64,000 bases of DNA, from contig NIVC01000166.1 of NCBI GenBank assembly GCA_002269645.1, forward strand, positions 434,001 through 498,000. Direction: 5' to 3'. A model generated the notes under the pieces. That model worked only from the letters and a program-made list of their open reading frames with translations. It had not been told where the DNA came from and did no database searches. Every line of letters begins with the position of its first letter. Within the stretch, counting starts at the first letter, position 1. Origin of the DNA: Macrostomum lignano (taxonomy: Eukaryota). The position numbers and the translations under genes were made by a program. Below, in pieces: positions 5,501-64,000 of this stretch.

Positions 5501-5863
5501 TTTATTATACTTATAAAAGGATAGCAAGAAATAGGTAAAAATTCATTTATTTTTATTGCATTATGTTATGCCTATCTCTAATTAGGTTCTAATGGTCTTT
5601 TAATCTATTTTTTTATGATAGCAAGATAGCAAGACCCTACAATCTTGTTGGTAAGGACAGTTGGCTTGTTAGGGTCTACAAAATAAAGTTGATAATTTAT
5701 AGTTTCAAGCTAGAAAAAGCTAGTAAATATAAATAAAAAATATAGTAAACTATGAGTTTGCCAAACATCTATATCTAGCTTTCCATAGCCATGTCTAAAG
5801 AATACTAGAAAATAAGCAAAACTTTACTAAATTTACTATTTGGCTTAGCTAGATAAAAATAAT

Positions 5864-5944
5864 AAGTCTTGACTATACTACTGACGGGGGGCGCAGGCGC
5901 CACAAATAGGCCATGAGGCCCCTATCGCAAAAGTCTTGACTATA
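5864..5944 (-). mobile_element. 53-bp GC-rich insert flanked by a 14-bp target-site duplication (probable 5'-truncated retroposon tail)
   Basis: AAGTCTTGACTATA occurs at 5864-5877 and 5931-5944 around the GC-rich 5878-5930, in very AT-rich DNA. The minus strand ends ...CCCCCCGTCAGTAG. Confidence 0.6.
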
Positions 5945-6324
5945 TACATGTATTATAATTTTAATAATAAACTGATTAGATTTTAGGATAATGAGCAATG
6001 TTTTTCAACCTAGGCTATTTGTCAAATTATGCTTTGTCATCTGCATAATGCTATTAAAATTACTATACTAATTGAATTTTTTGTAAACCTTTTTTGTTAT
6101 AGTAATTTATTGGCATTCTTAAACATTTTGTTACTTGTCAATGTCTTCTTTTTGAGAACTTGCTAAATATAGAACATTTATTTCATTAAACTGTTTGTGT
6201 TCTAAGTAAAAGGATTAGTTAGTTTTGTTTTAAATTTTGCATATGACCCTGGCAAACAAATTTAAATCATTACAGTACATTTTATAGCTCCATTTCTAGC
6301 AAATTTCTTGTCAGTGAAGCCAGC

Positions 6325-9160: not shown

Positions 9161-9379
9161 GCCTGGGACTGGCTGAATGGCGGTGGAGAAGAATCCGCGG
9201 CTGTTGCATCCTGATTTGTCCTTTTATGTTCTTCACATGCGAATAATTTCCCTTTGATTCTGGAATCTTAGTTACTAATCATGAAACAAATATTCATAGA
9301 GTTAATCCCTTAATACCTTCCATATTCCTACTCGGCACACCTAGTAGTCCTCTAATCCTCAAATAGTTCCCCGATCTGC

Positions 9380-9660
9380 ATCCCTAATTGTTCCCTAATG
9401 TACATCCCTAATAGTTACTTTTAATTAATGTACATTCAAAATATTTACTTAATTGACATCCCTAATAGTTTCCTAATGTACATCTCTAATAGTTCCCTAA
9501 TAACCATCCCTAATGTACCTCCCTAATAGTTACTTAATGTGCATGCCTAATAGTTACCTATAGTTACCTAATTACCATCCCTAATAGCTACCTAATTGCA
9601 TCCCTAATAGTTACCTAACTACATCCCTGAATAGTAACCACCTAATTTGTTTTCTCAATA
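9380..9660. repeat. Degenerate CCCTAATAGTT-core repeat
   Basis: Recurrent CATCCCTAATAGTT(A/C)C motif. Confidence 0.7.
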
Positions 9661-10287
9661 TTCTCTAATCCGCACTCATAATATTCCTTCTAATCTGAAT
9701 CCCTAAGTTTCCATTAATCCCCATAAAAATCTTCCGAGCCAATACTTAATCTTTATCGTTAGTTGTTATACCAATATCTTAACCATTTTTAAAAAACTTA
9801 TAGCAGAAGTTTTTTTTTCATTTTCGTTTTTTAATGCACACTAAATGAAATCAGCTTTTCTGTGGTTTTGATATCACCGTCATTCCTTCTTTGCACCGCT
9901 CTGTTATATTGGCACGTTTAGAACGTACTACGCACTATATTGTATATTGCATGTGTACATAGACCTGTAAGCTGCACAATGCCTCTGGTCACTTATCTTT
10001 TTTTATTATCTGTGCTGTGTAACTTATTGCCTTGTAGAAAAGCTGTTCTTTTAAATAAATTATAAACTGTGTTTATATCCGAACAGGTCTACTACTTAGC
10101 TTTTAGTTTAGTAGTATTTGCGACAAAAACATTTTCGCGTTAATATTGCCTCCTTCTCTTATGTCTGTCTGTGCATTGGCCTAGAAAATGCCACTTATTT
10201 ACATTAGTTCTGTACTACATTTGCATCGTTGTGTCACCTTGCGCGTTTCAAAATCGGGCGAGTCGCCTTGATGATAATAAGCCTACC

Positions 10288-10665
10288 CCAGTTTCCTACC
10301 ATGTCAACCCCCACCCCAGTTTCCTATCCCCGTCAACCTCCACCCCAGCTTCCTACCCCCGCCAACCCCCACCCCAGTTTCCTAACCCCGCCAACCTCCA
10401 CCCCAGTTTCCTACCCCCGCCAACCTCCACCCCAGTTTCCTACCCCCGCCAACCCCCACCCCAGTTTCCTACCCCCGCCAACCCCCACCCCAGTTTCCTA
10501 CCCCTGCCAACCCCACCCCAGTTTCCTACCCCCGCCAACCCCCACCCCAGTTTCCTACCCCCACCAACCCCCACCCCAGTTTCCTACCCCTGCCAACCCC
10601 ACCCCAGTTTCCTACCCCCGCCAACCCCCACCCCAGTTTCCTACCCCCGCAAACCCCCACCCAGT
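10288..10665. repeat. C-rich ~30-bp minisatellite
   Basis: Repeats of CCCACCCCAGTTTCCTACCCCCGCCAACCC; the proline-rich ORFs here are by-products. Confidence 0.95.
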
Positions 10666-11289
10666 TTCCAATTTTATTCAGCCTTCTTTGTAGTCTCTCG
10701 TAGACTCTCAGTAAAGTAATAAATACAAGCGTCACATTCCAAGGAGCAGGTTTCTAAAATAAAATATTTTTACCATGACGTTAGGCTGTGCTGCAATCAA
10801 TGTTTACGCAACTGTAGTTCCAATGTAAAAATTTAGACTAGACTAGATAAGCTTGCACTAATATTTGCACTCATAAATTGCTAATTTTAGCATTCAAATC
10901 GTTTGCTGTTATTGTGCAATTTTGATTTGTGTTTTTTTTCTGTTGTTCATTCGGCAGCACCGTTATTCAGCGCAGGAAAGAAAATCTCGGAAAATTTATA
11001 AATAAACAGCCTAAAAGATTTATTGTGAGCTTTACTAATCTGCCGTCCTTTGCGAATCGTTAAAATTTAACTTAAAGTTCAACTTACTAAAGAAGAATCC
11101 ATGTCTTTTGCGTGTCAAAGTTCTTTGCAGGTGGTGGGTGGCAATACAGGTAGTTGCTATTAAAATTCCATTGCAAAAGTATTAAATTTTTTTTACTTTT
11201 GCGCTAGATGCACAGTGACATCTTCCAACTGACGGAGACAATCGCTAATTAGGTACAGACTAGAGATAGTCTTCTTTCTTAGAGACAAA

Positions 11290-11765
11290 AGTTCCTTAAT
11301 CCACATCCCTATAATAGTCCCCATAATCTAAATTCCTAATAGTCCCCATAATCTAAATTCCTAATAGTCCCCTAAAACGCATCCCTAATAGTCCCCTAAA
11401 CCGCATCCTTAAAATCCCTTAATCCACATCCCTAACAATCCCCTAATCCACATCCCTAATAGTCCCCTAATCCAGATCTCCAATAGTTCCCTAATCCACA
11501 TCCCTAATAGTTCCCTAATCCACATCTCTAATAGTTCCCTAATCCACATCCCTAATAGTCCCCTAATCCGTATCCCTAATAGTCCCCTAAACCGCATCCT
11601 TAAAATCCCTTAATACACATCCCTAACAATACCCTAGTCCGTATCCCTAATAGTCCCTTAATCCGTATCCCTAATAGTCCCCTAAACCGCATCCTTAAAA
11701 TCCCTTAATACACATCCCTAACAATCCCCTAATCCGCATCCCTAAAAGTCCCTAATCCGCATTCC
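11290..11765. repeat. ~24-bp CCCTAA-core minisatellite
   Basis: Repeats of ATCCCTAATAGTCCCCTAATCCAC. Confidence 0.9.
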
Positions 11766-12070
11766 GCTTAAAATTGACTGCAGCTGCATATGATCTACGT
11801 ACTTATCGAAATACCGAATCGCCCATAGCAACAAGCTGGGAAACATTCTAATCAGCTCAGCAGGAGATCCCACAAACGAGTGACACAAGCTCTGAAGCGC
11901 CTGCTATTGGCTGCAGGATGGAGCGGAGAATGCGACAGGAGCATAGTAAAGCGACATCAGGAGCGGAGTGTACAAATATTCAACCAGCAACTATCGGTAA
12001 GCTCGATCATTGTAGGATGGAATCATTCTGCGAAGCCTTTTTCTGGTATCGAAAGCAACGCCGCGCAATG

Positions 12071-12822
12071 CATGGCAACGGCTGTCCTCTTCTGCTCCTT
12101 CTGTTCATCCTCCCAGCCGTCGCCCAAGCCGGCAGCGAGTTGCACAGCGGAGTGTTGCTCGGCGGCTGCCTGGTGCCGCAGACTCCGCAGCACTCTCGCT
12201 GTCGGCCTCGAGCGCCGGCATGTGCGCCTTCCTGTGCACTCAGCTCCGCCGGCCCTGCGTCGGCTGGAGCCACCGACATGTCTGCAACATGTCGGACAGC
12301 CTGCAACCGGCCAGTCTGACGAACGACACCGACTGCCAGGCGTGGAGCGCCCTGCTCCAGCTCGACTTCATCGCCTTCTGGCCCATGAGCAACGCCACTC
12401 GGACTCGCAATGCGGTCTCGAACAGCGGCCATCTCGACCTGCAGGGGAAATCCCGATGGAGTACACGGACAATGCCGTCAACTTCACTGGCCAGTTGGAT
12501 GTGTCAGAGCGCTTCAACATTGACCAGCTGGCTTCGGTGTGTCTCACCAGCTTCACCCTGTCCATGTGGGTCAAGTTCACCAACCCATCGAGAAACATTA
12601 TGCCACTTATTGAGGGCCTCATCATGCCTGGTGCATTTTACCCGCGAATCTGGCTTGAGCTGTCTTTGTCTCGCTTCCAGTTCTTTGTTCTGTCTCCAGA
12701 CTCTCACACTTATTCCTGTTTCAATTGATAATGAGACCGGCTGGACTCACGTCACGACCGTGTACGACAGGACGACACCGGCACAAGGACAACTTAAGTA
12801 CGAGCTACACTCGAAATCTATG
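12071..12822 (+). pseudogene. Secreted PAN/apple-like plus LamG-like protein; three frameshifts (pseudogene or base-call errors)
   Basis: A signal peptide (MHGNGCPLLLLLFILPAVAQA) is in one frame; CAFLC..CVGWSH..C and FIAFWPMS...SGHLDLQG in a second; NAVNFTG...FTLSMWVKF in a third; then GWTHVTTVYD back in the second. One shift lies in a GGGG run near 12445. GT donor at ~12823. Confidence 0.55.
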
Positions 12823-13414
12823 GTAAATGTTTTGAAGGCAACTTTTCGCCGAGAAATACACTACAGAGATAGGGGGTTTTAATTTTTTCAGCATAAAAAT
12901 TGCTATTGCTTTTGATAGAAGGCAGATCCAGTGTTCATCTTTTCATTTGTTATGCCTTTCCTATTGCCCTATCGATATTCATAAAGCATTTCGTTCAGAA
13001 ATAGTTTTAAAGGCAAGGTTTCAACCGGAAAAATACGGAGATAAGAAATTTAACGATTTTCAACACTAAAACAGTGATTGGGTCTCTTAACAGGGTCAGA
13101 GAAAGTCCTAATCACACTATTTTGTGCCTCACATGCTGCTCTAACGACGCATTAACCGATTTTTCATGTTAAATTGGTCTTGTCATTATTTTAAACGTTT
13201 TTTTTCAAGTGCTGATTAAACGGAGTCAACTGGGATACTGAGAATACGGCTCTTCAGCGTTTCCAGCTTGTGTATGTTTTGGATCACTTTACAATCATTA
13301 AAAAATTTTAACTAAGCCGGGCACTAAGCCTAGTGAAAAATATTTTAGGCACGAATTTAACAGACCCCCTTTTTTGTTTGGGATCAAATTTGGGACCTTG
13401 TTAGTCAGACACAC

Positions 13415-13530
13415 ACACAGGTGCACACTCACACAGGAGTGTACAGCGGCCCTAACTTTATTTATCGTTTGGCATGTAAACTTTTCACTGTGTGCCTTGG
13501 CAGTTGGCCCTCAAGGCGGCAGTTAATCTG
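13415..13530 (-). mobile_element. Internal fragment of the SINE family also at 50585-50932 and 56185-56440
   Basis: CACACTCACACAGGAGTGTACAGCGGCCCTAACTTTATT...TTGGC(C/T)CTCAAGGC is shared with ~50705-50805. Confidence 0.8.
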
Positions 13531-13571
13531 CCTTGATTTGGCGGAAGTTGCTTGTTGCTACTTGCCGTAGT

Positions 13572-13625
13572 CAGTCCGTCAGCGTCCAGGTCTCAGTGTT
13601 GTACAGCAGAACGGTCTCGACACCG
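13572..13625 (-). mobile_element. Short LINE RT C-terminal fragment
   Basis: Reverse complement encodes ETVLLYNTETWTLTD, matching the LINE at ~62947-62995 (ETILLYNAKTWMLTD). Confidence 0.7.
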
Positions 13626-13636
13626 CCCTTGTCAGC

Positions 13637-13735
13637 AGTTGACCAGCTGACTTCGGTGGGTCCCACCAGATTTAACCTGTCTCTGTGGGTCAAGGTCACC
13701 AACCTATCGACACATGAGATGCTTCGGAGTTTCTG
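13637..13735 (+). pseudogene. Diverged partial duplicate of the LamG-like exon
   Basis: VDQLTSVGPTRFNLSLWVKVTNLS versus IDQLASVCLTSFTLSMWVKFTNPS at 12517-12590; the nucleotide similarity is clear. Confidence 0.75.
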
Positions 13736-14371
13736 AGAGAGCTTTGAGAGACTCTGAAGTTGCTCTGCTGCAGGAGCTGTGCTAAACAGTCCATCAATCG
13801 TCCTTGTAGTACATTCTTAAAGAGGTTTTCGTCTGAAAAATACATTTTGCTAACATGGACGTGAAGTATAATCTCGTGACTGCTTTAATAGCGTCTACTT
13901 GTGATTTTAGGCAGATCAACCGCTTATCTATTTCTGTTTAACCTTTAATTGGAGGGACGAGAAACTTTGTTTCTTGGAAACTGTCTCGTCTGGTTGGTTT
14001 ACAAAAATAAGAAGTTATTTTTTTCAGAAATGATCACAAAAATGGTGATAGTTTTTACTGGAAGCTGATCTGAAGATCATCTTTCAGTATAAAACGTCAT
14101 CAGAGTTGTAAAAAGCTTTAGTGTACTTTAGTGGAGGAATTCTGCAGTTTGCGATTGAATAAGTCTATTTTTTATATCGTCGATGCGCTGATACCTAAAA
14201 CCAGATATTTGTATATGTACCCGCATTTCTGTCAGTTATACTGCTTTGATGCTAGGTTATGCTTCAGTATGTTATTGCTTTCCCCAAACAGCCTTGAAAA
14301 GTTGAAGGATGGCATCATGGTAGCAGCAAGAATGACAAGAATTTCTCCTGACGCTTTTTTGGAGGGTTGGG

Positions 14372-14437
14372 GGTTAGCAGAGCAGCTCAGCGGCAACGCG
14401 CTGACGACGCCTGAGCCAGAGTCCCGGGTTCGATGCC
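14372..14437 (+). mobile_element. Possible tRNA-derived SINE head
   Basis: A-box-like AGCTCAGCGG (14384-14393) and B-box-like GGTTCGATGCC (14427-14437), followed by CAGTGGCGTAG, a hAT-MITE-like terminus. No complete cloverleaf. Confidence 0.35.
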
Positions 14438-15676
14438 TGCAGTGGCGTAGACTAAATGGAGACTGGGGAAACATCCCTCAGTTATTCCAATCCTCTAAAA
14501 ATTTTAATGATCTCCTTCAGTGAGGCAAGGGCTCTCGCCCCCCCCCCCCAGTGAGAGCGGTGTGTGCATGAACTGTGGATCAAATTCGTGACTGACACTA
14601 CTGCGCAATGGCAGTAGCGCGCTGGGCATGGCATAAATGCTTAAAGACTTCTACAGCTAGTGTACAAGCGTGCAATGATAGTTTTTTCGAAACTACTAGG
14701 ACTGCTGGAAATTACTGTTGTATTAAGACGTAATACTTCTGTCCACTTTATACATAGGATTTATTTATACTCTAAAAATTAAAGATCTGAATTTCCAAGC
14801 ACTTAGTGAATGATTTTTGCCGTCCGCTATTACGGCGATCACATGAAGCTGACATGGGCTTCATCAGTTTGTCGACTTAATCAGAAAAAATGCATCTGGA
14901 GACTGCAGTCAAATGCGTCATATGGAGCCAACTTTTTCATAAAGGAATTACTCATAGAACGAGTGTTACGCCTTGAGCAACCAGAAATTCTACTTGTCCT
15001 GTTATTCGTATGGATCACGGTAGTCGGTAGAATTAATTGGGACCTTTATTCTTTTTACAACTTTTTGTAAGTCATTGGCACCTAAACTTTGTGACGTGAG
15101 AGTGAGAACCTCTAGAGAAGGAAGGCCGTAGCCTAGCAGTCACCTTTATTTGGGTCTTAATTGGTATATCGGCTTGGGTCTGCTCGTGCGATTGGGGGGG
15201 GGGCGAACCGCCCAAGACATTGTGGTAGTTTACACACTTAACGTTTAGAATATAAAGTTTCTTTTCTATTTTCATTAGCTTGGGTAACATTTGAGTCTAT
15301 TGATTTAATTCTATAACCAATTTGAAACTCTTGGCGCCCCCATAGCCGTATTGTTCGGTAATGAGTTTGCTCAATTCAACTGCGCTGTGCAAAAACAAAA
15401 ATACCCAGATACGCTCGCAGCACTTATTTGTACTTCAGTATATTTTGACGTCAACTCTAGAAAGCACTATTAGGAAAATTCTCGAAGCTTCTAAGGATTG
15501 TAAACAGCTAGCGATTAACTTTAGTCATGACGCATTCAACAAGGTACAAAAATTTATTTATATTCAAAACGGTTTGTATCGCAACTATTTTTTTCTCATG
15601 CAACGGACGCATTGCCAGCGATACAGCCTAGTGACAAGAAAGTATTGCAAGCTGCCACCGCATCACCGCTACCGTG

Positions 15677-16664
15677 ATGTCGGAACGTTCATCAAGCGCT
15701 TATCTACGAATAAAACTAAGCGGAACTTCCTGGACGAAGGAGAAGGAAATCGGGCACGGGTGCTTCGGGAAAGTCTTCCAGGGTGAGCTCCGTACAAATT
15801 TGATCACCCTATGCCTGGCATTAGTCACAGGGAAATCGGTTCTCGATTACAGGTAGACTTGAAGATGGAACTCCAATTGCTGCAAAACAGGTAAAGCTGG
15901 AAGCCAGCTCCATGGATCAAATGCACTCACTTGCTGAAAGAGTTGCCAAAGAGTTGGCGATCCTGGAGTCGGTGACGGGCAGTCACAAGAACATTGTTCG
16001 CTACTATGGCTTCTCCATCAGCGTCAGGTCGAAGTCGATTTACTTTCTCATGCAGCACATCGAGGGACCGACTCTGGACTCCTACGTTAAAAGCATGGCC
16101 GGAGCGATGTCTGAGAATGAGATCCGCGTCATCACTCGCCAGCTGCTGTCGGCCCTAGTCTTTGTCCACGCCAAGGGCATTGTGCACAAGGATGTGAAGC
16201 CGGACAACGTACTCATCAGGTCGAGCGACAACGTCGTAAAGCTGATAGACTTCGGCATCGCTGGGATCTGCGGTCATAAACGGGATTCAATCGGTCCCAT
16301 CGCCTATTCGGCCCCCGAGATCACCGACGAGAGCCTCCCGCAGAGCACCAAGTGCGACAGCTTCTCCCTCGGCCTCACTGTGTACTTCATGGCCACGAAG
16401 AGTCACCCGCTGATGAACGGTGGCGCCGAAGCTCTGATGCTGGCCCTCATGCCGATGATGCTGGCCATCAAGATGAGATCACAAGAGCCTCTGCCGGACA
16501 TGGATTCTAGCAAGTTCTCAAGCGCGCTGTGCTCTTTCTACAAGAGAAGCACGCATAAGCACCCTAGCAACAGATCTTCCTGCTCAGAGCTGCTGTTCAA
16601 GTCGGAGTTCATGACTGGAGTCAGAGAGAACACCCAGGATGGGCAGTCTTGTGCTATTCAGTAA
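15677..16664 (+). CDS. Ser/Thr protein kinase, kinase domain only (STE/MAP3K- or NEK-like, non-RD)
   Basis: Exons 15677-15782 and 15853-16664 (70-nt phase-1 GT-AG intron). IGHGCFGKV, AAK, alphaC KE, HKDVKPDN, DFG, APE, DSFSLG and the subdomain XI Arg are all present. Confidence 0.9.
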
Positions 16665-17324
16665 CTACTGAGTGCTATGCTTAGCGTTAAAGTTCAATCT
16701 GAAATCTAAACATATGAATTCTGATGATTCCTACTTCATGTATACTTAAACCAGCTATCGTCTGATTTGAAACCACATCTGATCTGAACGAACTCAAGTG
16801 TTTGTGACATGTACAGATTTGCTTTCCATTATACAAGGGGTTGCCAGCTGGGCCCCAGGAAATGAAACATTTTATCTTTCATTTAACTCTAACTCCATCT
16901 TTTTTGGACAACTCATCCCTAAAGTTATGGTTAAAAATGTGGTACATTTTGGGTCTCTGTCTTACAGAAAAAAATTTGATTGTTTACGTCAAACTCAAGA
17001 GACACTTGTGACTGTTATAGACAAGCTATCAGTAAAATTTTGCCATATACAGCCATCTACTGGTTTTCTTTCCTAAGTAGTTCCTGACTGCAAATAATCT
17101 TTGTAATATAGATTTTGTCAGCCTAACTTTATAATAAAGCCACCCAAACTGAGAATCGATCGGCTAATTGTAAGCCGTGTACTTTATTTATTTATTCGAA
17201 ACAGTGGTTGAGAAAGGTTGTGTTCGGAGGGGGGCTGAGAAAGAGAGAAAAAAGAAAATATGTCGTATTTTCACGAAACCCTCCGTCTTTTTTGATTTAC
17301 AAAAATTGCTAGGAATAGTCTGTA

Positions 17325-18730
17325 GCCAGATCAGACAGTCTGTTAGCCAGATCGGACAGTCTGTAGCCAGATCAGACAGTCTGTAGCCAGATCAGACAGT
17401 CTGTAGCCAGATCAGACAGTCTGTAGCCAGATGAGACAGTCTGTAGCCAGATCAGACAGTCTGTAGCCAGATCAGACAGACTGTAGCCAGATCAGACAGT
17501 CTGTTAGCCAGATCAGACAGTCTGTAGCCAGATCAGAAGTCTGTAGCCAGATCAGACAGTCTGTAGCCAGATCAGACAGTCTGTAGCCAGATCAGAAGTC
17601 TGTAGGCAGATCAGACAGTCTGTAGCCAGATCAGACTGTCTGTAGCCAGATCAGACAGTCTGTAGCCAGATCAGACAGTCTGTAGCCAGATCAGACAGTC
17701 TGTAGCCAGATCAGACAGTCTGTAGCCAGATTAGATAGTCTGTAGCCAGATCAGATAGTCTGTAGCCAGATTAGATAGTCTGTAGCCAGACCAGATAGTC
17801 TGTAGCCAGATTAGATAGTCTGTAGCCAGATTAGATAGTCTGTAGCCAGATCAGATAGTCTGTAGCCAGATCAGACAGTCTGTAGCCAGATCAGACAGTC
17901 TGTAGCCAGATCAGACAGTCTGTAGCCAGATCAGACAGTCTGTAGCCAGATCAGACAGTCTGTAGCCAGATCAGACAGTCTGTAGCCAGATCAGACAGTC
18001 TGTAGCCAGATCAGACAGTCTGTAGCCAGATCAGACAGTCTGTAGCCAGATCAGACAGTCTGTAGCCAGATCAGACAGTCTGTAGCCAGATCAGACAGTC
18101 TGTAGCCAGATCAGACAGTCTGTAGCCAGATCAGACAGTCTGTAGCCAGATCAGACAGTCTGTAGCCAGATCAGACAGTCTGTAGCCAGATCAGACAGTC
18201 TGTAGCCATATCAGAAGTCTGTAGCCAGATCAGACAGTCTGTAGCCAGATCAGACAGTCTGTAGCCAGATCAGACAGTCTGTAGCCAGATCAGACAGTCT
18301 GTAGCCAGATCAGACAGTCTGTTAGCCAGATCAGAGCCAGATCAGACAGTCTGTTAGCCAGATCAGACAGTCTGTAGCCAGATCAGACAGTCTGTAGCTA
18401 GATCAGACAGTCTGTAGCCAGATCAGACAGTCTGTAGCCAGATCAGACAGTCTGTAGCCAGATCAGACAGTCTGTAGCCAGATCAGACAGTCTGTAGCCA
18501 GATCAGACAGTCTGTAGCCAGATCAGACAGTCTGTAGCCAGATCAGACAGTCTGTAGCCAGATCAGACAGTCTGTAGCCAGATCAGACAGTCTGTAGCCA
18601 GATCAGACAGTCTGTAGCCAGATCAGACAGTCTGTAGCCAGATCAGACAGTCTGTAGCCAGATCAGACAGTCTGTAGCCAGATCAGACAGTCTGTAGCCA
18701 GACCAGACAGTCTGTAGCCACACCTGACAG
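17325..18730. repeat. 20-bp minisatellite array (~70 units)
   Basis: (TCTGTAGCCAGATCAGACAG)n. Confidence 0.98.
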
Positions 18731-18998
18731 TCTATATTGGCTGAAGGAGCAGCCCGACATCCGCACAGCCCCTGATCACAAACTGGTGATCAGGGTGCCA
18801 CGATGAGATTCCCACACACGATACAGAAACAAGCATTTAAGACATTCGCCTAACTTTTGTGCCCCAGCGTCAGTTGAGGGGGGGGACACTAGAAACGCTA
18901 AAGTATTAATTTGCATCATTCTTTATGACCTGTTAATCATGTGCAAAAGTGCGAAAAGTGCAAAAGTGCCATGATTGCGCAATTCTAGGCTGAACTGC

Positions 18999-24206
<5,208 letters not shown>

Positions 24207-27645: not shown

Positions 27646-32300
<4,655 letters not shown>

Positions 32301-42378: not shown

Positions 42379-56767
<14,389 letters not shown>

Positions 56768-56804
56768 GCGCTTTACGTTTTACCTCGGGGGGGGGTTTGA
56801 CACT

Positions 56805-57020
56805 TGATGTACATTGCTTTTTTAGCTCTGCGGGTGAACCTTAATCTTATGTACATTGTTGCTATTTTTAGCTCTGCTAGAGAATCCTCACTCCTTATGT
56901 TACATTGTTGCTATTTTTAGCTCTGCTAGAGAATCCTTACTCCTCATGTACATTGTGGCTATTATTAGCTCCGCTGGTAAACCCTCACTTCTTATGTTTT
57001 CACTTTTGCTATTTTTAGCT
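56805..57020. repeat. Degenerate ~57-bp tandem repeat
   Basis: Recurrent ATGTACATTGTTGCTATTTTTAGCTCTGC. Confidence 0.75.
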
Positions 57021-57608
57021 CCATGAAGCTAATTGCTGCTTTAATGGTAGATTAAGTCTATGGTTTCAGACTTGGATAATGATCACAGTCACGAGTGGTT
57101 GCGATGGCTGCCATCTGACACTTGAATTGTTGACGCTAGACGAAAGATATCAGTACCAGTATTTGCAAATTGATTTCAGTAAGATACGAGAAACGTTTTT
57201 TTAATTTTATCATTTAATCATTTTCCTCTGTATCTAACAGAACAATTTCGTACTTATTCAATAAATCTGTCACTGAATCGTAAACACAAGTTACGATTAA
57301 TTCAATCAGGAGAAAGCAAAATAATTTTTCTTGATACGAGCGTATATATTTATGAAGTCTGATAAAACAAACAATTGTTTAAAAAATCAAAATGCCAATA
57401 AGCTAAAGCAATTAGGACAAAATTTTATGGAATAGAAATATTGCAAAAGTTAATTTTTTAAACGCGCTATATACTACTAAGTACAGATCAGATAAATTAA
57501 GCGAATTAAAGCTATATAAAGGAATATTATGCGGAAAATTTTTTAGAAAGACTGCATTAAATCTGAACTTCAATTCAAATAGAAAATTTTCAACTTGATA
57601 TTTTAGGT

Positions 57609-57884
57609 CAGGGTCGGCAAAAATGTTTTTTATCTCAAAGGGCCAGATAGAGAACCCAGCGCATGACTGTGGGCTAGAGGGGAGAGAGAATAAAGATGAG
57701 AGATGAGAGACACTCGTAGGAAAATGGAGAGGCGAGGGGCGACAGGCCAGGCGAGGCGAGAGGAGAGGAGAGAACAGAGAACAGAGAGAGGAAGAGACTC
57801 TGAGCAAGCCGGATTATTATTGTGAAGTATCAAAGGACCCGAGGCCAAAGAGAGGCTTAGCGGGCCGCAGTTCGCCTACCCCTG
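57609..57884. mobile_element. Charlie-like hAT MITE
   Basis: Termini CAGGGTCGGCAA and TTCGCCTACCCCTG with a subterminal CGGGCCGCAG; flanks TTTTAGGT/TTTTACAG are only a partial TSD. Confidence 0.6.
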
Positions 57885-57972
57885 TTTTACAGCTTAGTAA
57901 ATCAATTCACACGCACGCAGCAAGTTGAAATTTGAACTCGCCAAGTCCAGTTAAAAAAGGAAAAGTAAAAAG

Positions 57973-58641
57973 TCATCCGGACTTCTCCTTCCTTCTGCCC
58001 TTGTCAGCGCCGCCATAGTAGAGGATCTGAGCCACAATGACGGCATTGCCGGCGCTGGCCCCCAGGTACAGCAGAACCAGCATTGGGTCCGCAGTCTCCT
58101 GCACCGAGGTGAACACTCGAGCCAGGCTGCCCAACAGCAGCATCGAATAGGTGATCAGCGACACCTGGCCGGTGCTACTCGAGCTGAAGTTCCGCCAAGC
58201 CTGAGCAGCTTTGCCAGCCAGCACCAGCGGCAGGGTGCACGCCTGGCCAGCCGCAATGACAGCCAGTGGCACCAGACTGGGCGCTGCCAGCAGGGCCACC
58301 AAGCCAGCGAATATCGCGCAGAAGGTCAACGCGAGCCCCAGCGACCGGCCTCTAGCGTAGTAGATGGACAGGGCGGCGATGGCGATTGTCTGGCCGGCCA
58401 GTAGGAAGCCCTCGCCGTAGGCGCTCAGCGGGAATCCCCGGCGAAGGCCGTACAGAAAGCCTACAGTGGAGGCCGCCAGTTCGCAGGCTGTGGTCACCGG
58501 GGACAGGCCGCGGCTGCTGCCGCTGTTGAACACCTTCAAGAGCTGCGGCAGCTTCACGCTGGCTGAGCCAGCTATCACTGAGTAGCCCAGTGCCTTGGCT
58601 GCTACGGCGGCTGCCTGCGGCGGGTTGGCAGCGTCTGTTTG
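57973..58641 (-). CDS. MPDU1: Mannose-P-dolichol utilization defect 1 (PQ-loop) homolog; single coding exon without ATG
   Basis: KALGYSVIAGSASVKLPQLLKV, YGEGFLLAGQT and TGQVSLITYSMLLLGSLARVFTSVQETAD match MPDU1/Lec35. The frame is open up to a CAG acceptor at 58642-58644. Confidence 0.88.
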   Translation of the reverse strand, partial: QTDAANPPQAAAVAAKALGYSVIAGSASVKLPQLLKVFNSGSSRGLSPVTTACELAASTVGFLYGLRRGFPLSAYGEGFLLAGQTIAIAALSIYYARGRSLGLALTFCAIFAGLVALLAAPSLVPLAVIAAGQACTLPLVLAGKAAQAWRNFSSSSTGQVSLITYSMLLLGSLARVFTSVQETADPMLVLLYLGASAGNAVIVAQILYYGGADKGRRKEKSG

Positions 58642-58643
58642 CT

Positions 58644-58689
58644 GTCTGTCTGTCTGTCTGTCTGTCTGCCTGTTTGTCTGTCTGTCTGC

Positions 58690-58775
<86 letters not shown>

Positions 58776-58800
58776 GTCTGTCTGTCTGTCAGTCTGTCCG
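58644..58800. repeat. (TCTG)n microsatellite directly upstream of the MPDU1 acceptor
   Basis: Visible directly. Confidence 0.96.
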
Positions 58801-59111
58801 TCTATCTTGCCTGTTTTACACTATTGTTAATACCTAAAGTCATTAAAAGTCAGATTAGTCTCAAATTAGAAAAAATAGAATAAAAGAAATTTAAAATCAA
58901 ATCAACTGGAAGTTCATAGTAGCTGAGAAAGCATTTATTCAGTAAAAATGTTTTATTTTATATTATAATTGCTACCGATCAGCAGCACTGGTACACCAAA
59001 GACGGCATTGACAGCAAACCATCAAGCAAATAAGGCAATCAGAAATGCGTTGACAATTTTGGTGCACATTTTCGGTCTGGCCCAACATTTTGCAGAACAG
59101 CCAGTATGACA

Positions 59112-59932
59112 ATGCGGGATCTACTTTAACAAACTCTTCCAAATATTATTGTGGGATCTACTTTACTAATCTCATTGCCAACTATATTGTGGGATCTACT
59201 TTACCAATCTTATTGCCAACTATATTGTGGGATCTACCTCACCAATCTCATTGCCAACTATATTGTGGGATCTACTTTACCAATCTTATTGCCAACTATA
59301 TTGTGGGATATACTTCACCAATCTTATTGCCAACTATATTGTGGGATCTACTTTACTAATCTCATTGCCAACTATATTGTGGGATCTACTTTACCAATCT
59401 TATTGCCAACTATATTGTGGGATCTACTTTACTAATCTCATTGCCAACTATATTGTGGGATCTACTTTACCAATCTTATTGCCAACTATATTGTGGGATC
59501 TACCTCACCAATCTCATTGCCAACTATATTGTGGGATCTACTTTACCAATCTTATTGCCAACTATATTGTGGGATCTACTTCACCAATCTTATTGCCAAC
59601 TATATTGTGGGATCTACTTTACTAATCTCATTGCCAACTATATTGTGGGATCTACTTCACCAATCTTATTGCCAACTATATTGTGGGATCTACTTTACCA
59701 ATCTTATTGCCAACTATATTGTGGGATCTACTTTACCAATCTTATTGCCAACTATATTGTGGGATCTACTTTACCAATCTTATTGCCAACTATATTGTGG
59801 GATCTACTTCACCAATCTCATTGCCAACTATATTGTGGGATCTACTTTACCAATCTCATTGCCAACTATATTGTGGGATCTACTTCACCAATCTCATTGC
59901 CAACTATATTGTGGGATCTACTTTACCAATCT
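59112..59932. repeat. 38-bp minisatellite in the ATPAF2 3' region
   Basis: (GGGATCTACTTTACCAATCTTATTGCCAACTATATTGT)n. Confidence 0.97.
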
Positions 59933-59954
59933 CTATCCCATCTGCACTGGTGAT

Positions 59955-61615
59955 CTATTTCCCCTGCCTTGAGGCGGCGGTGGCGGCCGCACCAGCCAGC
60001 TGCACTTCGCGCCACTCGTGGCTGACAAGCGCCATCAGTGTGCCGGCAGAGACGCGGCACTCCAGCTCGGTGGCATCAACGCCATGGTGCCACTCCACTT
60101 GGCCCCACTTGTCCGCCTGGAACTGCGACTCCAGCCGGCTGAGGGAGCAGGCCTCGGAGACTGGGAGGCGTCTGCGGGCCAGTGCGTGTGTAAATTGATT
60201 TATGAAGTTGGCAATGGCCCAGCAACTGAGCATCTGGGAGGCTGGCCCAGCAACTGAGAATCTGGGAGGCTGGCCCAGCAGCTGAGGATCTGGGAGGCTG
60301 GCCCAGCAACTGAGGATCTGGGAGGCTGGCCCAGCAACTGAGGATCTCCGAGGCTGGCCCAGCAACTGAGGATCTGGGAGGCTGGCCCAGCAACTGAGCA
60401 TCTGGGAGGCTGGCCCAGCAACTGAGGATCTGGGAGGCTGGCCCAGCAGCTGAGGATCTGGGAGGCTGGCCCAGCAACTGAAGATCTGGGAGGCTGGCCT
60501 AGCAACTGAGGATCTGGGAGGCTGGCCCAGAAACTGACACTCTGGGAGGCTGGCCCAGCAACTGACACTCTGGGAGGCTGGCCCAGCAACTGACACTCTG
60601 GGAGGCTGGCCCAGCAACTGAAGATCTGGGAGGCTGGCCCAGCAACTGACACTCTGGGAGGCTGGCCCAGCAACTGAGGATCTGGGAGGCTGGCCCAGCA
60701 ACTGAGGATCTGGGAGTCCTGGAATCCATCACAAAGCTGAAGACAACGAAGGTCAGACCAACCTGTCAAGCAGACACACAGCCAGCAGACATGACTTGAG
60801 ACTCTCGGCAGCGAACCGGACCCCGGAGACGCCCCAAGAGTTCAGCGACGCCAGTCTGGCTCTGAACTTTTTCAACGCTTCGCCGTCAATCTGCGGCGGC
60901 TGCAGCGTGAGAGTTGGCGCCAGCCGCAGGCTGTACTGCTGGTTGACGTTGTCAAGCACAGGCTGCCACCGCTGCCGCTGCAGCTGGTGCAGATCTTCAG
61001 GCTCGGTGCTCCAGAACAGCAGGGTGTCAGTTTCCAAGTACTCCAGTATCGCGGCGGCCTGCTGGTCGCGGCTCAGTCCCAGCGGATTGTCTATGGCCGA
61101 GTTGCACAGGCTGGTCAGGTGCATGCGGGTCCTGCGGGGAGACGGGTGATTAATGAGCTCAAACACTGGGGAAGTTAGGTGGTGCTCAAACGTGGGGATA
61201 TTTTGGGGAATTTAGATGCTCAAACGGGAAGATATTTTGGGAAATTTAGGTGCTCAAACTTGGGGATTACGAGCGTTTTTGAACCTCAACACTTCAATCA
61301 ACGCTCACTAAAAATATGTAGAAACTGCTAGAGTCATTAGCCCATTAACAGCCCTCACCTGTCAATATGATTAACCTGAGAATTCCATTCCTGAACCACA
61401 GCCAATGCTAGACCTTCGTGCGGCACAACAAACGGCTGTCCGCCCGGTGTCCGCAGTCTGCGCTGATCCAAGTTGACCTCGTAGGCCCCGGGGCCGGATT
61501 TGGTCACGTGGGCCTGCTTGTAGAACCGTTTGATCTTGCCGCCAGCCATGCTGGTCAGGTCACGGCTGTGACTGAGGCACAGGGCCTCGCGGGTGAGCAG
61601 CTGGCGGATGAGAAA
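59955..61615 (-). CDS. ATPAF2: ATP synthase F1 assembly factor 2 (ATP12), 3 coding exons
   Basis: Exons 61615-61359, 61131-60763, 60171-59955 (phase-2 GT-AG introns). KRFYKQA, YEVNLDQRRLRTP, LALAVVQEWNSQ, MHLTSLCNSAIDNP, YLETDTL, ESLKS and SRLESQFQADKWGQVEWHH match ATP12. First ATG at 61549; the frame stays open 22 codons further, to an acceptor at 61616-61618. Confidence 0.92.
60212..60715. repeat. 30-bp minisatellite filling the last ATPAF2 intron
   Basis: (TGGGAGGCTGGCCCAGCAACTGAGGATC)n variants. Confidence 0.96.
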
Positions 61616-61899
61616 CTGGAATGCAGCACGGTTAACACTGCCTTAGCACTGCTACTAAACCAAAGCAGCAGGTTGTCAGAGCCAGCACTATCTTATACCT
61701 TTCTTTTGAGTCACTACAGTAGGCCAAGTTCACTGCATCTCCTGTGCTCATATGACTCAACCATGTCATATGACTAATCCCTTGAATATGCAGACACACT
61801 CATCTCTTGGGCAGTTGTGTTATCAAATTTTAAATCATTTTAATAATGTGAAGTTACACGACGGGTTGACAAGCCTTGGTCACAATTCTTTCCACATAT

Positions 61900-63345
61900 G
61901 ATGAAATTGTGACCAAGGCCGATGCCCCCGCTGCCAAACGATCTGAGTCTGAGGCTGCCGCCGGAGACGCCGTTGCCGGCAGAGGAGAGTTTTAATGTAG
62001 CCCCAGTCAGCACAGCCGAAGTTGTGAGGCTCGCCCAACAGTCACCGGACGGGAAAGCGCTGGGCCCGGACGAGGTGCCCATCGAGGCGCTGCGACTCCA
62101 CTGGGTGGCCAGCGAGGTCGCCAGTGTGATGAACCGCGTGCTTTTCGGTGAGACGGCACCCAACGAATGGACCACGGTGCACATCGTCGCTATTCCGAAG
62201 AAGCCGTGCACCACGCGGCTTGAGGAGCACCGAGGTATCTGCCTGCAGTCCTGCGCTGCGAAGCTGTTCAACCGGATGCTGTTATCGCGGTTGCAGCCCG
62301 TGCTGGATCCGTACCTGCGTCCTAAACAGAACGGCTTCCGGCCCCACCGCGGCACATGACGGCCAGTTGCACCAGACATCATGGCACGAATGCTGCTGTG
62401 CTGACACCGGACGGCCTGTCAAATTTCTTTGAGACATCCACTGGGGTGTTCAGGGAGATACGCTTGCGCCGTTCCTGTTCGTCCTGGTGCTTGACTGGGT
62501 GCTGCGGACTGCTCTCCCTTCTAACCACGTCCACGACGGCTTCCTGTTGCAGCGACGCGTGGGTCGACGCCAACCGGAAAGGCAGCTTAGCGTTCTGGGC
62601 TACGCCGATGATCTCGCCCTGCTGTCCTCGACCGTCGAGGGCGCCCAACGCCAGCTGGACCGGCTGGTGAGCGTTGCGGCGAGCGTCGGCCTGGTGGTCA
62701 ACACGCAGAAGACCGTCGTGCTCTGCGTGCCGGACGACATCGGGGCTACAATTTTCTGCCGAGGCGCCGACGGACAGGCGACGAAGCTTTCGTGCTGTCA
62801 GCAGTTCGTCTACCTCGGCGGTCTGGTGCCTGACGTTAGCGAGGACCTGCGACGTCGCCGTGGACTTGACTGAGCTGCATTCCATGAGGGTTGTCCTGCA
62901 GTCCGAGGCCCTGCCTGACTGTTAGAGGGCATTGTTCCAGGTGGTAATCGAGACCATCCTGTTGTACAACGCCAAGACCTGGATGCTGACGGACTCACAA
63001 AAACAGCTGGTCGATGCAGCCCACGCTGGCCTGCTGCGCACTGCCTTCAAGATCGGTTACAAGTGAGTCACCAATGCGGCACTCTATTGCCGCACTGGCC
63101 TGTCTCGTACCAGAGAACTGTTGCGCCATCAGCAAATCCAGCTAGCAGGCCGTTTCATCTGAGCCAAGTTGTACTGCCCACAGCTGATGCAGGAGGTGCT
63201 GCTGCTGACACTACAGGCACCCTACCGGCAGGGGCAGGCGTGTACTTGGCATTTTGTTGACTGCCTGCTGGCTGATGCCAGCGCCCCAGACACTGCTAGT
63301 GGAGCAGCCTATGTTCATACCCAGGCCTTGAAATGTGCCTTGTGA
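61900..63345 (+). mobile_element. 5'-truncated, decayed RTE/RTEX-like LINE (reverse transcriptase)
   Basis: KALGPDEVP, IPKK...RGICL, QNGFRP, GV.QGDTLAPFLF, LGYADDLAL, FVYLG and ETILLYNAKTW are spread over several frames. The DFxKAFD block is missing (internal deletion near 62360). Confidence 0.9.
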
Positions 63346-64000
63346 TGTTGTCTACTAACTGATTGACAATGTATTTTTGTTGTTGTGTTGTATGGAATTA
63401 GGCTAAGAGAAATGTGGTAATACACAAAGATTTTGCCAATGCATAGAACAGTTTAGCTTAATAAAAATGACTTAAAATTTGATACATAACCATTCAATAT
63501 ACTAATTTACCTGTCTGTTGAGTAGCATTGAACTAGGACTGATGTTTGTCATAGCAATGCAAGAAAAATAGTGAACTTATTATGGACAAGCAAGCATACA
63601 AACAAACCTTAGAGATTTAGTATATTTAGATTTGACAACAAAGATATACAATGGTACTGACTTAAAAAACCTATTGCTTTAGGTTAATAGTAGCACCAAG
63701 ACATAAAATTGGGGATATAAGTATATAATCCTAACTTGAAGTTGAATATATCAGATGTGTGATGCTCAAATGACAATTCTAGTGCTTGATGAATAACAAA
63801 GATTGTATCTTGCTTTGCTTGTTTATTTGGCTTTAAGACTTCATAAGTGATAGCAAGGCTTGTAACAAGATTATAAAGCTAGGGCACTTTATATATTGGC
63901 AGTGCTTATCCCCACGGTACCGCAGGAACAATTTCTGTCCCATTCCAACGGTACCGTGCGAATAATTTTCTGCTTATCCGCACGGCACACTGACGAGATA

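What the first reader, a model, noticed from the sequence alone, without database searches (positions are those of the whole stretch)
57973..61620. Candidate ATPAF2-MPDU1 operon with start codons donated by a spliced-leader AUG
Seen: both genes are on the minus strand, head-to-tail, and each frame begins in phase 0 right after a CAG acceptor. ATPAF2 reads TGCATTCCAG|TTT CTC ATC CGC CAG CTG..., with an in-frame TAA just upstream of the acceptor. Adding one AUG gives M-FLIRQLLTREALCLSHSRDLTSMA, an Arg/Leu/Ser-rich presequence-like leader that a mitochondrial protein needs and that the ATG at 61549 would skip. MPDU1 reads CAG|CAA ACA GAC... and has no ATG before TM1. I found no MPDU1-like exon in the ~1.3 kb up to the ATPAF2 stop, which is mostly repeats. 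Two minus-strand AATAAA (58934-58939, 58952-58957) lie between the genes. The phase-2 ATPAF2 donors do not fit the MPDU1 acceptors (phase 0 or 1), arguing against a fusion. Known: flatworm spliced leaders end in AUG that can initiate translation, and M. lignano trans-splices. Inference: a polycistronic unit resolved by polyadenylation plus SL addition, with SL-dependent mitochondrial targeting.
Basis: partly seen in the sequence, partly recalled or inferred. Interest (0 to 1): 0.8.

Follow-up and report, generated by a model that had tools for sequence, protein, structure and literature searches.

The report
Spliced-leader start codon for flatworm ATPAF2
Two housekeeping genes of the flatworm Macrostomum lignano sit head-to-tail like a typical operon of this species; the first (ATPAF2) almost certainly takes its start codon from the trans-spliced leader, a mechanism known in flatworms since 2006, while the same claim for the second (MPDU1) is not confirmed at the proposed site.

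Summary
The window is Macrostomum lignano Mlig_3_7 contig NIVC01000166.1 (100% identity).

ATPAF2 is well supported:
- The GenBank model of the 98.9% copy (PAA94538.1, "partial") starts exactly at 61615, behind a TTCCAG acceptor.
- The published SL ends in ATG and would be in frame there.
- In the 95% paralog the internal ATG (61549) is ATA, so only an AUG at the acceptor gives a full ATP12 domain.
- That paralog reads CATG where the window has CCAG. An older assembly has CAG there. This is probably a trace of SL-bearing RNA-seq reads used in Pilon polishing.
- M+FLIRQ… is collinear with the Echinococcus presequence.

MPDU1 is only partly supported:
- It has no ATG before TM1 in any of the three copies, and no MPDU1-like upstream exon was found.
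- The annotated 5' ends fit acceptors at 58610 and 58598, not 58641. At both, the SL AUG is out of frame.
- In-frame acceptors exist at 58614 and 58641.

The operon fits the published criterion, with about 350 bp of non-repeat spacer, but co-transcription is unproven.

This is a new example of a known mechanism. No transcript reads could be examined.

The parts
61616..61621 (-). ATPAF2 trans-splice acceptor TTCCAG. It matches the M. lignano SL-acceptor motif [T/C]TNCAG.
   Evidence: Sequence. Motif from PMC8629364. GenBank PAA94538.1 on the 98.9% copy starts at the base equivalent to 61615.
61643..61645 (-). In-frame TAA in the outron, 9 codons upstream of the acceptor. No ATG lies between it and the acceptor.
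61359..61615 (-). ATPAF2 exon 1. It reads FLIRQLLTREALCLSHSRDLTS, then M23 (ATG 61549-61547, context ANNATGG), then the start of the ATP12 domain (KRFYK).
60763..61131 (-). ATPAF2 exon 2.
   Evidence: The joined exons equal P0001 exactly.
59955..60171 (-). ATPAF2 exon 3, including the stop TAG at 59957-59955.
60215..60716 (-). 28-bp tandem repeat x18 inside ATPAF2 intron 2.
59116..59933 (-). 38-bp tandem repeat x21.6. It fills most of the ATPAF2 3' region and the spacer.
58934..58957 (-). Two AATAAA hexamers (58957-58952 and 58939-58934), candidate ATPAF2 poly(A) signals. Both are lost in the paralog L002.
58633..58807 (-). (CAGA)n microsatellite abutting the MPDU1 ORF. It is open in frame, and every third CAG is a phase-0 acceptor.
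58593..58643 (-). Cluster of MPDU1 acceptor AGs.
   Evidence: Annotated CDS starts are 58608 (window), 58611-equivalent (L001) and 58596-equivalent (L002).
57973..58641 (-). MPDU1 single coding exon (PQ-loop x2) with stop TGA at 57975-57973. There is no ATG before TM1.

Best explanation
This is an ordinary M. lignano two-gene unit.

ATPAF2 is transcribed from a promoter in the roughly 300 bp between a dead LINE fragment and the acceptor. Its outron is removed by SL trans-splicing at 61615. The SL's 3'-terminal AUG then lies in frame and acts as the initiator. The product is M-FLIRQLLTREALCLSHSRDLTS…, a leader of 29 residues before the conserved KRFY motif, which is the position of the mitochondrial presequence in orthologs. 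In this copy the internal AUG (61549, strong Kozak context) could also be reached by leaky scanning, because the SL AUG has a weak context (U at -3, U at +4).

MPDU1 lies about 1.34 kb downstream, of which about 0.35 kb is non-repeat. It is most likely released from the same precursor, or from its own outron, by SL trans-splicing within the CAG-rich acceptor cluster at 58641-58598. Only mRNAs spliced at a phase-0 acceptor are productive. The most likely one is 58614, giving M-AAAVAAKALGYS…; 58641 is less likely. These mRNAs would also use the SL AUG.

Shown here: the gene structures, the absence of cis ATGs, the paralog differences and the agreement with the annotation. Inferred: the SL junctions, which acceptor MPDU1 uses, translation from the SL AUG, co-transcription and mitochondrial import.

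My confidence by component is about 0.8 for the ATPAF2 SL-AUG start, about 0.5 for an MPDU1 SL-AUG start at an in-frame acceptor, and about 0.65 for the operon.
For: Species and SL:
- The window is M. lignano.
- The SL is CGGTCTCTTACTGCGAAGACTCAATTTATTGCATG. Thirty per cent of genes are trans-spliced and 15% lie in operons. The operon criterion is a repeat-adjusted spacer under 1 kb, with a mode near 100 bp.

ATPAF2:
- GenBank PAA94538.1 and PAA94620.1 are 5'-partial CDSs that begin exactly at the TTT after the acceptor. Gene ends in that annotation were cut at peaks of SL-trimmed reads.
- In paralog L002 the internal ATG is ATA, so the next Met lies inside the ATP12 domain. The gene is otherwise intact, with pN/pS of about 0.4.
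- L002 reads CATG|TTT where the window reads CCAG|TTT. CATG is the SL's last four bases.
- The same paralog type in the older ML2 assembly begins FQFLIRQ, that is TTC CAG.
- Mlig_3_7 was polished with Pilon using RNA-seq reads. So the CATG is best read as a trace of SL-joined reads. If it is real, it is a cis ATG at the identical position.
- BLASTP against E. granulosus ATPAF2 runs into the leader, residue 12 aligning with residue 10.
- There are 29 residues before KRFY, against 24-46 in orthologs. Starting at ATG 61549 leaves only 6.

MPDU1:
- The ORF is under strong constraint (pN 0.002, pS 0.016) and has no ATG before TM1 in any of three copies.
- No N-terminal exon was detectable. An HMM scan of the whole window gave a best E of 0.91, at an unrelated place.
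- Annotated 5' ends fall behind AGs of the cluster.
- Family members with equally short N-termini exist, for example MLSKALG… and MDVLAVSKLLG….

Spacer: 818 + 175 bp of tandem repeat within about 1340 bp.
Against: - No transcript read was examined. Every SL junction is inferred.
- The annotated MPDU1 ends imply acceptors at 58610 (two copies) and 58598 (paralog). Both are phase 1. There the SL AUG gives MPP* or MPRHWATQ*, not MPDU1.
- None of the three models starts at 58641 or 58614.
- The MPDU1 acceptors do not match the YTNCAG motif.
- Both AATAAA are mutated in the paralog.
- The leader is only weakly presequence-like. Its net charge is +2, it has two acidic residues, and its helical moment of 0.40 is at the low end of the orthologs.
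- In the window copy ATG 61549 has an optimal Kozak context.
- ATPAF2 is not annotated on the window's own contig.
- ATPAF2 and MPDU1 are not neighbours in E. granulosus.
Confidence: 0.6

Rival explanations
1. ATPAF2 of this copy is translated from the cis ATG at 61549 to give a 258-aa protein. The open frame between the acceptor and that ATG is merely 5' UTR.
For: ATG 61549 has an optimal context (A at -3, G at +4), while the SL AUG has a weak one (sequence). Twenty-two stop-free codons are not rare by chance. A few predicted orthologs have only 6-7 residues before KKFY.
Against: The paralog has ATA at this codon yet keeps an intact, constrained gene. The leader aligns with the E. granulosus presequence. 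Well-annotated orthologs have 24-46 residues before KRFY. In a scanning model the in-frame SL AUG is met first.
Confidence: 0.15
2. MPDU1 has an unrecognised upstream cis exon that carries the ATG. Candidates are the ORF starting at 59088 (MLGQTENVHQNCQRISDCLICLMVCCQCRLW, with phase-1 donors at 58995 and 58989 that fit the annotated phase-1 acceptors), or an ATGAGATTG|GTRAAG module of the 38-bp repeat (phase 0).
For: The annotated 5' ends are phase-1 acceptors, which fit phase-1 donors of the 59088 ORF. Joining 58995 to 58598 recreates the conserved SK-x-LG motif. The ATG and the whole ORF are retained in the paralog. Sharing of acceptors between cis- and trans-splicing is reported for parasitic flatworms.
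Against: The candidate peptide scores no better than its shuffles against an ortholog N-terminal HMM (32.3 bits against a mean of 32.3; p=0.42). It is not found by an HMM scan of the window. Its donors (GTACCA, GTGCTG) depart from GT[G/A]AG. Its substitutions against the paralog are 2 nonsynonymous and 1 synonymous. No public model includes such an exon.
Confidence: 0.2
3. The two genes are not an operon. MPDU1 has its own promoter in the A/T-rich 58810-59110 stretch and is trans-spliced as a monocistronic gene.
For: About 60% of trans-spliced M. lignano genes are not in operons. The raw spacer is 1.34 kb. The gene pair is not conserved in E. granulosus.
Against: The repeat-adjusted spacer is about 350 bp, and only about 100 bp of non-repeat sequence separates the AATAAA from the acceptor cluster. 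This falls in the operon mode of the published distribution. The arrangement is kept in all three copies. A database model that starts with a non-ATG codon joins both genes.
Confidence: 0.3
4. MPDU1 mRNAs spliced at the phase-1 acceptors are translated from a near-cognate codon, for example CUG at 58590 in the context GCACUGG.
For: The annotated ends are phase 1. The CUG has G at -3 and G at +4.
Against: It would leave only 12 residues before KLPQ, too few for TM1. There is no precedent at this gene. In-frame acceptors lie 4 and 31 nt upstream.
Confidence: 0.07

Closest known systems
Flatworm SL 3'-terminal AUG used as initiator methionine (Cheng et al. 2006, J Biol Chem 281:733, as cited in PMC9851317 and PMC12582326); 'slORFs'
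   Same: The SL ends in AUG. Here the AUG is in frame with a conserved ORF that lacks a suitable cis start. In S. mansoni 28% of SL AUGs are in frame, and more than 40 cDNAs need the SL AUG.
   Different: This is a free-living macrostomorphan rather than a parasite. The SL-encoded Met heads a presequence-like leader. Translation from the SL AUG was not demonstrated here. I found no M. lignano paper that discusses SL-AUG initiation.
M. lignano SL-resolved operons (Wudarski et al. 2017, PMC5730564; Ustyantsev & Berezikov 2021, PMC8629364)
   Same: Two same-strand genes form the unit, which is the commonest operon size. The spacer is inflated by repeats, with about 100-350 bp of non-repeat sequence. 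Both genes are conserved housekeeping genes.
   Different: The SL tracks, poly(A) tracks and transcriptional-unit assignment for this locus could not be consulted. The downstream acceptors do not match YTNCAG.
ATP12/ATPAF2 (PF07542) and MPDU1/Lec35 (PQ-loop, PF04193)
   Same: Clear orthologs, at 40-44% identity to metazoan ATPAF2 and 40-45% to MPDU1 relatives.
   Different: M. lignano MPDU1 lacks the roughly 35-residue N-terminal segment with two conserved Cys that most orthologs have.

Membership tests
SL-AUG-initiated ORF (flatworm slORF) | The species' SL ends in AUG. | tested here: met
   Published SL …TTATTGCATG. The window is M. lignano at 100% identity.
SL-AUG-initiated ORF (flatworm slORF) | The mRNA is SL trans-spliced at the stated acceptor. 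| tested here: inconclusive
   ATPAF2 has strong indirect support: annotated 5' ends fall exactly at the acceptor in two copies, the TTCCAG motif is present, and the paralog reads CATG against CAG in the ML2 assembly. For MPDU1 the annotated ends imply 58610 and 58598, not 58641. No reads were available.
SL-AUG-initiated ORF (flatworm slORF) | The SL AUG is in frame with the main ORF, with no intervening stop. | tested here: met
   Met for ATPAF2 at 61615. For MPDU1 it is met only at 58641, 58614 and 58593, and not at the annotated 58610 and 58598.
SL-AUG-initiated ORF (flatworm slORF) | No cis AUG can give the full-length conserved protein. | tested here: met
   MPDU1 has none before TM1 in any of three copies. 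The ATPAF2 paralog has ATA at the only candidate. In the window copy ATG 61549 leaves 6 residues before KRFY, against 24-46 in orthologs.
SL-AUG-initiated ORF (flatworm slORF) | Translation starts at the SL AUG. | not testable with these tools
   This needs ribosome profiling, N-terminomics or reporter assays.
M. lignano operon (criterion of PMC8629364) | Adjacent genes on the same strand, with no opposite-strand gene between them. | tested here: met
   The spacer holds only repeats and short ORFs.
M. lignano operon (criterion of PMC8629364) | Repeat-adjusted intergenic distance under 1 kb. | tested here: met
   About 1340 bp minus 818 minus 175 leaves about 350 bp.
M. lignano operon (criterion of PMC8629364) | The downstream gene is SL trans-spliced. 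| tested here: inconclusive
   The 5'-partial models start behind AGs. A 'partial' label alone does not prove trans-splicing, since another partial model in L001 starts at no AG.
M. lignano operon (criterion of PMC8629364) | A single polycistronic precursor. | not testable with these tools
   The only hint is the fused database model A0A1I8HT12.
Mitochondrial presequence | An N-terminal leader of 20-40 residues that is net positive, poor in acidic residues and amphipathic. | tested here: inconclusive
   There are 29 residues before KRFY. The leader holds 4 K/R and 2 D/E, and its maximum helical moment of 0.40 is the lowest among the orthologs compared. It is collinear with the E. granulosus presequence. 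TargetP and MitoFates were not available.
ATP12/ATPAF2 | The Pfam PF07542 domain. | tested here: met
   E=3.8e-38, covering 123 of 124 model positions.
MPDU1 (PQ-loop) | Two PQ-loop repeats and best matches to MPDU1 orthologs. | tested here: met
   PF04193, two stretches. 954 relatives at E<=1e-10. UniRef names the M. lignano protein an MPDU1 homolog.

The most novel reading that the evidence does not exclude
Two conserved housekeeping genes of a free-living, early-branching flatworm have no usable genomic start codon and depend on the spliced leader's AUG. For ATPAF2 the SL-encoded Met heads the mitochondrial presequence, so trans-splicing is a precondition for making an import-competent assembly factor. 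The window copy might in addition make a leaderless isoform from the strong internal AUG by leaky scanning. MPDU1 would be productive only from the subset of mRNAs spliced at in-frame acceptors of a microsatellite-derived acceptor cluster. That would make acceptor choice a translational on/off switch.
Probability: 0.4. Interest if true: 0.45.

Novelty: new member of a known kind. Interest (0 to 1): 0.3.

Why it matters
If confirmed, this extends SL-AUG initiation from parasitic flatworms to Macrostomorpha. That would support the view that the conserved terminal AUG of flatworm spliced leaders has an old coding function.

It also has a practical side. The GenBank and UniProt models for these genes are labelled partial, lack a Met or are fused (PAA94538.1, PAA94620.1, A0A1I8HT12) because annotation pipelines ignore the SL AUG.

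The CATG/CCAG difference further suggests that polishing with RNA-seq reads wrote SL bases into the Mlig_3_7 assembly at a trans-splice site. Anyone designing promoters or guide RNAs from that assembly should know this.

Tried and rejected
1. A cis exon 1 for MPDU1 at 59088-58995. It looked attractive because its phase-1 donors fit the annotated acceptors and it recreates SK-x-LG. It scores no better than shuffles (p=0.42), is invisible to an N-terminal HMM scan and has poor donors. It is kept only as a rival.
2. A search for transcript-derived proteins or contigs of M. lignano or other Macrostomum species. The P0001 cluster holds only genome-derived and UniRef entries. The nearest MPDU1 and ATPAF2 Logan hits are about 40% identical and come from unrelated organisms.
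3. Two exact-match scans of metagenome contigs with exon sequences. Both returned nothing.
4. Supplementary tables of three M. lignano papers, searched for ATPAF2, MPDU1 and Mlig007483. Nothing was found. A full-text search for the gene ids also found nothing.
5. An SL RNA gene in the window. None was found with up to 3 mismatches. No Rfam family was found in 47000-64000.
6. Conservation of the gene pair in E. granulosus. It is absent.
7. AATAAA as strong evidence for a poly(A) site. This was weakened because both hexamers are lost in the paralog, and none follows the MPDU1 stop within 475 bp.
8. A tRNA-derived SINE as the identity of the insertion in L002. No tRNA was detected.
Full report
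**Source and copies**

The window is identical to M. lignano Mlig_3_7 contig NIVC01000166.1. Locus L003 positions 4609-20636 equal window 64000-47973 at 100% identity. Two further copies were fetched:
- L001 (NIVC01000007.1), about 98.9% identical.
- L002 (NIVC01000006.1), about 94-95% identical in the flanks. This is a paralog of the kind expected in this hidden polyploid.

**Observation**

On the minus strand ATPAF2 has three exons: 61615-61359, 61131-60763 and 60171-59955. The joined translation equals GenBank PAA94538.1 residue for residue and hits Pfam ATP12 at E=3.8e-38.

MPDU1 is one exon, 58641-57973, with two PQ-loop matches. It has 954 relatives at E<=1e-10.

- the TTCCAG acceptor;
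- the in-frame TAA (61645-61643);
- the internal ATG (61549);
- the two AATAAA;
- the phase-2 donors;
- the repeat-rich spacer;
- the absence of any ATG before TM1 of MPDU1.

**Background from the literature**

The M. lignano SL is CGGTCTCTTACTGCGAAGACTCAATTTATTGCATG. Thirty per cent of genes are trans-spliced and 15% lie in operons. The SL acceptor motif is [T/C]TNCAG. Operons are defined by a repeat-adjusted spacer under 1 kb, with a mode near 100 bp (PMC8629364).

In the Mlig_3_7 annotation, gene ends were cut at peaks of SL-trimmed reads. The assembly itself was polished with Pilon using RNA-seq reads as well as genomic reads (PMC5730564).

Use of the flatworm SL AUG as initiator is established for S. 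mansoni: Cheng et al. 2006, as summarised in PMC9851317 and PMC12582326.

**ATPAF2**

Four independent lines point to an SL-encoded initiator.

1. *Annotated 5' ends.* The two annotated copies are 5'-partial CDSs whose first codon is the TTT right after the acceptor. L001 position 10001 equals window 61615. The acceptor TTCCAG fits the published motif.

2. *Loss of the internal ATG in the paralog.* In L002 the internal ATG is ATA (Ile). The next Met lies inside the ATP12 domain. The paralog is nevertheless intact and constrained, with pS 0.0385 and pN 0.0158. A full-length protein from that copy therefore needs an AUG at the acceptor.

3. *CATG in place of CCAG.* L002 reads …GCATTCATG|TTTCTC where the window and L001 read …GCATTCCAG|TTTCTC. 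The two changed bases turn the acceptor into CATG, the last four bases of the SL. The same paralog type in the older ML2 assembly starts FQFLIRQLLTCEAL…, that is TTC CAG (UniRef A0A1I8HT12). Mlig_3_7 was built from previously deposited PacBio data and then polished with RNA-seq reads. The simplest reading is therefore that SL-bearing reads overwrote the two bases nearest the junction. That would be indirect evidence that mRNAs carry …CATG directly before TTTCTC. If the CATG is real instead, the paralog encodes the same Met in cis at the identical position. Either way M-FLIRQ… is the N-terminus.

4. *Collinearity with orthologs.* BLASTP against E. granulosus ATPAF2 extends into the leader, aligning ALCLSHSRDLTS with CVILRHSR-LEF (residue 12 with residue 10). 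With the SL AUG there are 29 residues before the conserved KRFY motif. Well-annotated orthologs have 24-46. Starting at ATG 61549 leaves only 6.

Caveats on ATPAF2:
- My crude measures make the leader only weakly presequence-like. It has 4 K/R and 2 D/E, and its helical moment of 0.40 is at the low end of the orthologs.
- In the window copy ATG 61549 has an optimal Kozak context while the SL AUG has a weak one, so a second, leaderless product is possible.
- Nothing here shows that targeting is regulated by trans-splicing.

**MPDU1**

The ORF is strongly constrained between paralogs (pN 0.002, pS 0.016). The 45 bases upstream of TM1 are identical in all copies apart from one A-to-V change.

Most orthologs carry about 35 further N-terminal residues with two conserved Cys. 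No such exon was found:
- An HMM of 33 ortholog N-termini found nothing in a six-frame scan of the whole window. The best hit had E=0.91 and lay elsewhere.
- An ORF I noticed at 59088 scores no better than its own shuffles (p=0.42).

Short N-termini do occur in the family, for example MLSKALG… and MDVLAVSKLLG…. A protein starting a few residues before KALGYS is therefore plausible.

Their CDSs start at 58608 (window, AVAAK…), at the equivalent of 58611 (L001, AAVAAK…) and at the equivalent of 58596 (L002, KALGY…).
- The window and L002 starts fit acceptors GGCAG|CC (58610) and GTAGTAG|CC (58598).
- The L001 start, one to three bases upstream of 58610, follows no AG. It fits 58610 only if the SL's terminal G was retained when the reads were trimmed, which is my inference.
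- Both acceptors are phase 1. The SL AUG would then read MPP* or MPRHWATQ*.

The three near-identical copies were given three different ends, and the zone holds seven AGs. I therefore infer heterogeneous acceptor use, and possibly a bias of coverage-peak calling towards the most downstream site. Neither inference is shown.

Mechanistically the best acceptor is 58614, the first AG after the pyrimidine-rich tract CTGCCAACCCGCCGC. It is phase 0 and would give M-AAAVAAKALGYS… with G at +4. So an SL-AUG start for MPDU1 remains the leading explanation, but at a different site from the one proposed, and with real doubt.

**Operon**

- The spacer from the ATPAF2 stop to 58614 is about 1340 bp. Of this, 818 bp are a 38-bp tandem repeat and 175 bp are (CAGA)n.
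- About 350 bp of non-repeat sequence remain. Only about 100 non-repeat bases separate the AATAAA pair from the acceptor cluster. This is the published operon mode.
- The arrangement is kept in all three copies.
- A UniProt model that starts with a non-ATG codon joins the genes through a cryptic donor in exon 3 (CTGGCTG|GTGCGG) to the 58634 acceptor. This hints at a spanning transcript but may be a prediction artefact.
- Against the operon: both AATAAA are mutated in L002, and the pair is not linked in E. granulosus.
- Co-transcription is inferred, not shown.

**Verdict**

This is an ordinary M. lignano gene pair that illustrates two known features of the species, SL trans-splicing and operons, and one mechanism known from parasitic flatworms, the SL AUG as initiator.

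The ATPAF2 case is convincing on indirect evidence. The MPDU1 case is open. I found no discussion of SL-AUG initiation in the M. lignano papers I read. It is therefore a new example rather than a new kind.

No RNA reads could be examined with these tools. Mapping the public RNA-seq runs would settle all three questions.

Noticed in passing
L002:9996-10000 (NIVC01000006.1), equivalent to window 61616-61619: The paralog reads CATG where the window and L001 read CCAG, while the ML2-derived protein of the same paralog type implies CAG. This is probably SL bases written into Mlig_3_7 by Pilon polishing with RNA-seq reads. Other trans-splice sites of this assembly may carry the same artefact.
   Followed up: partly
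window 47470-47486, minus strand: TCAATAATTATTGCATG closely resembles the SL 3' end TCAATTTATTGCATG: 10 exact terminal bases, plus TCAAT after a 2-nt insertion relative to the SL. No GTAAG donor follows, so it is not an SL RNA gene. It could be another polishing trace, a retroposed 5' end or chance.
   Followed up: partly
window 59116-59933, minus strand: Nine units of the 38-bp tandem repeat contain ATGAGATTG followed by a consensus donor (GTGAAG, GTAAAG or GTGAGG). These are repeated 'ATG plus phase-0 donor' modules that would fit the phase-0 MPDU1 acceptors.
   Followed up: no
window 61922-62873, plus strand: Frameshifted fragments of a non-LTR retrotransposon reverse transcriptase (…IPKKPCTTRLEEHRGICL…, …YADDLALL…). 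They lie head-to-head with ATPAF2 and leave only about 300 bp for its promoter and outron.
   Followed up: partly
L002:9469-9975: A 507-bp insertion sits 24 bp upstream of the ATPAF2 acceptor in the paralog. It is apparently tolerated, as expected for an outron. No tRNA-like sequence was detected in it.
   Followed up: partly
window 59955-61615 (= L003:6994-8654): ATPAF2 is intact here and identical in protein to PAA94538.1. No gene is called at this place on the window's own contig NIVC01000166.1, where only MPDU1 and an SDF-family transporter are listed.
   Followed up: no
UniRef A0A1I8HT12 (P0029), mapped to window about 59991 / 58634: A 490-aa database protein named an MPDU1 homolog is an ATPAF2-MPDU1 fusion. 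It uses a cryptic GT in ATPAF2 exon 3 and drops the last 12 residues of ATPAF2.
   Followed up: partly
window 20001-24000 and 30001-32000: Blocks of low GC (0.31-0.36) with very strong GC skew (+0.45 to +0.63) and AT skew (+0.22 to +0.32). They probably hold long strand-asymmetric simple repeats.
   Followed up: no
window 58641-58800, minus strand: The MPDU1 reading frame stays open through the (CAGA)n microsatellite as (QTDR)n. SL addition at upstream phase-0 CAGs would therefore add variable QTDR repeats to the N-terminus.
   Followed up: no
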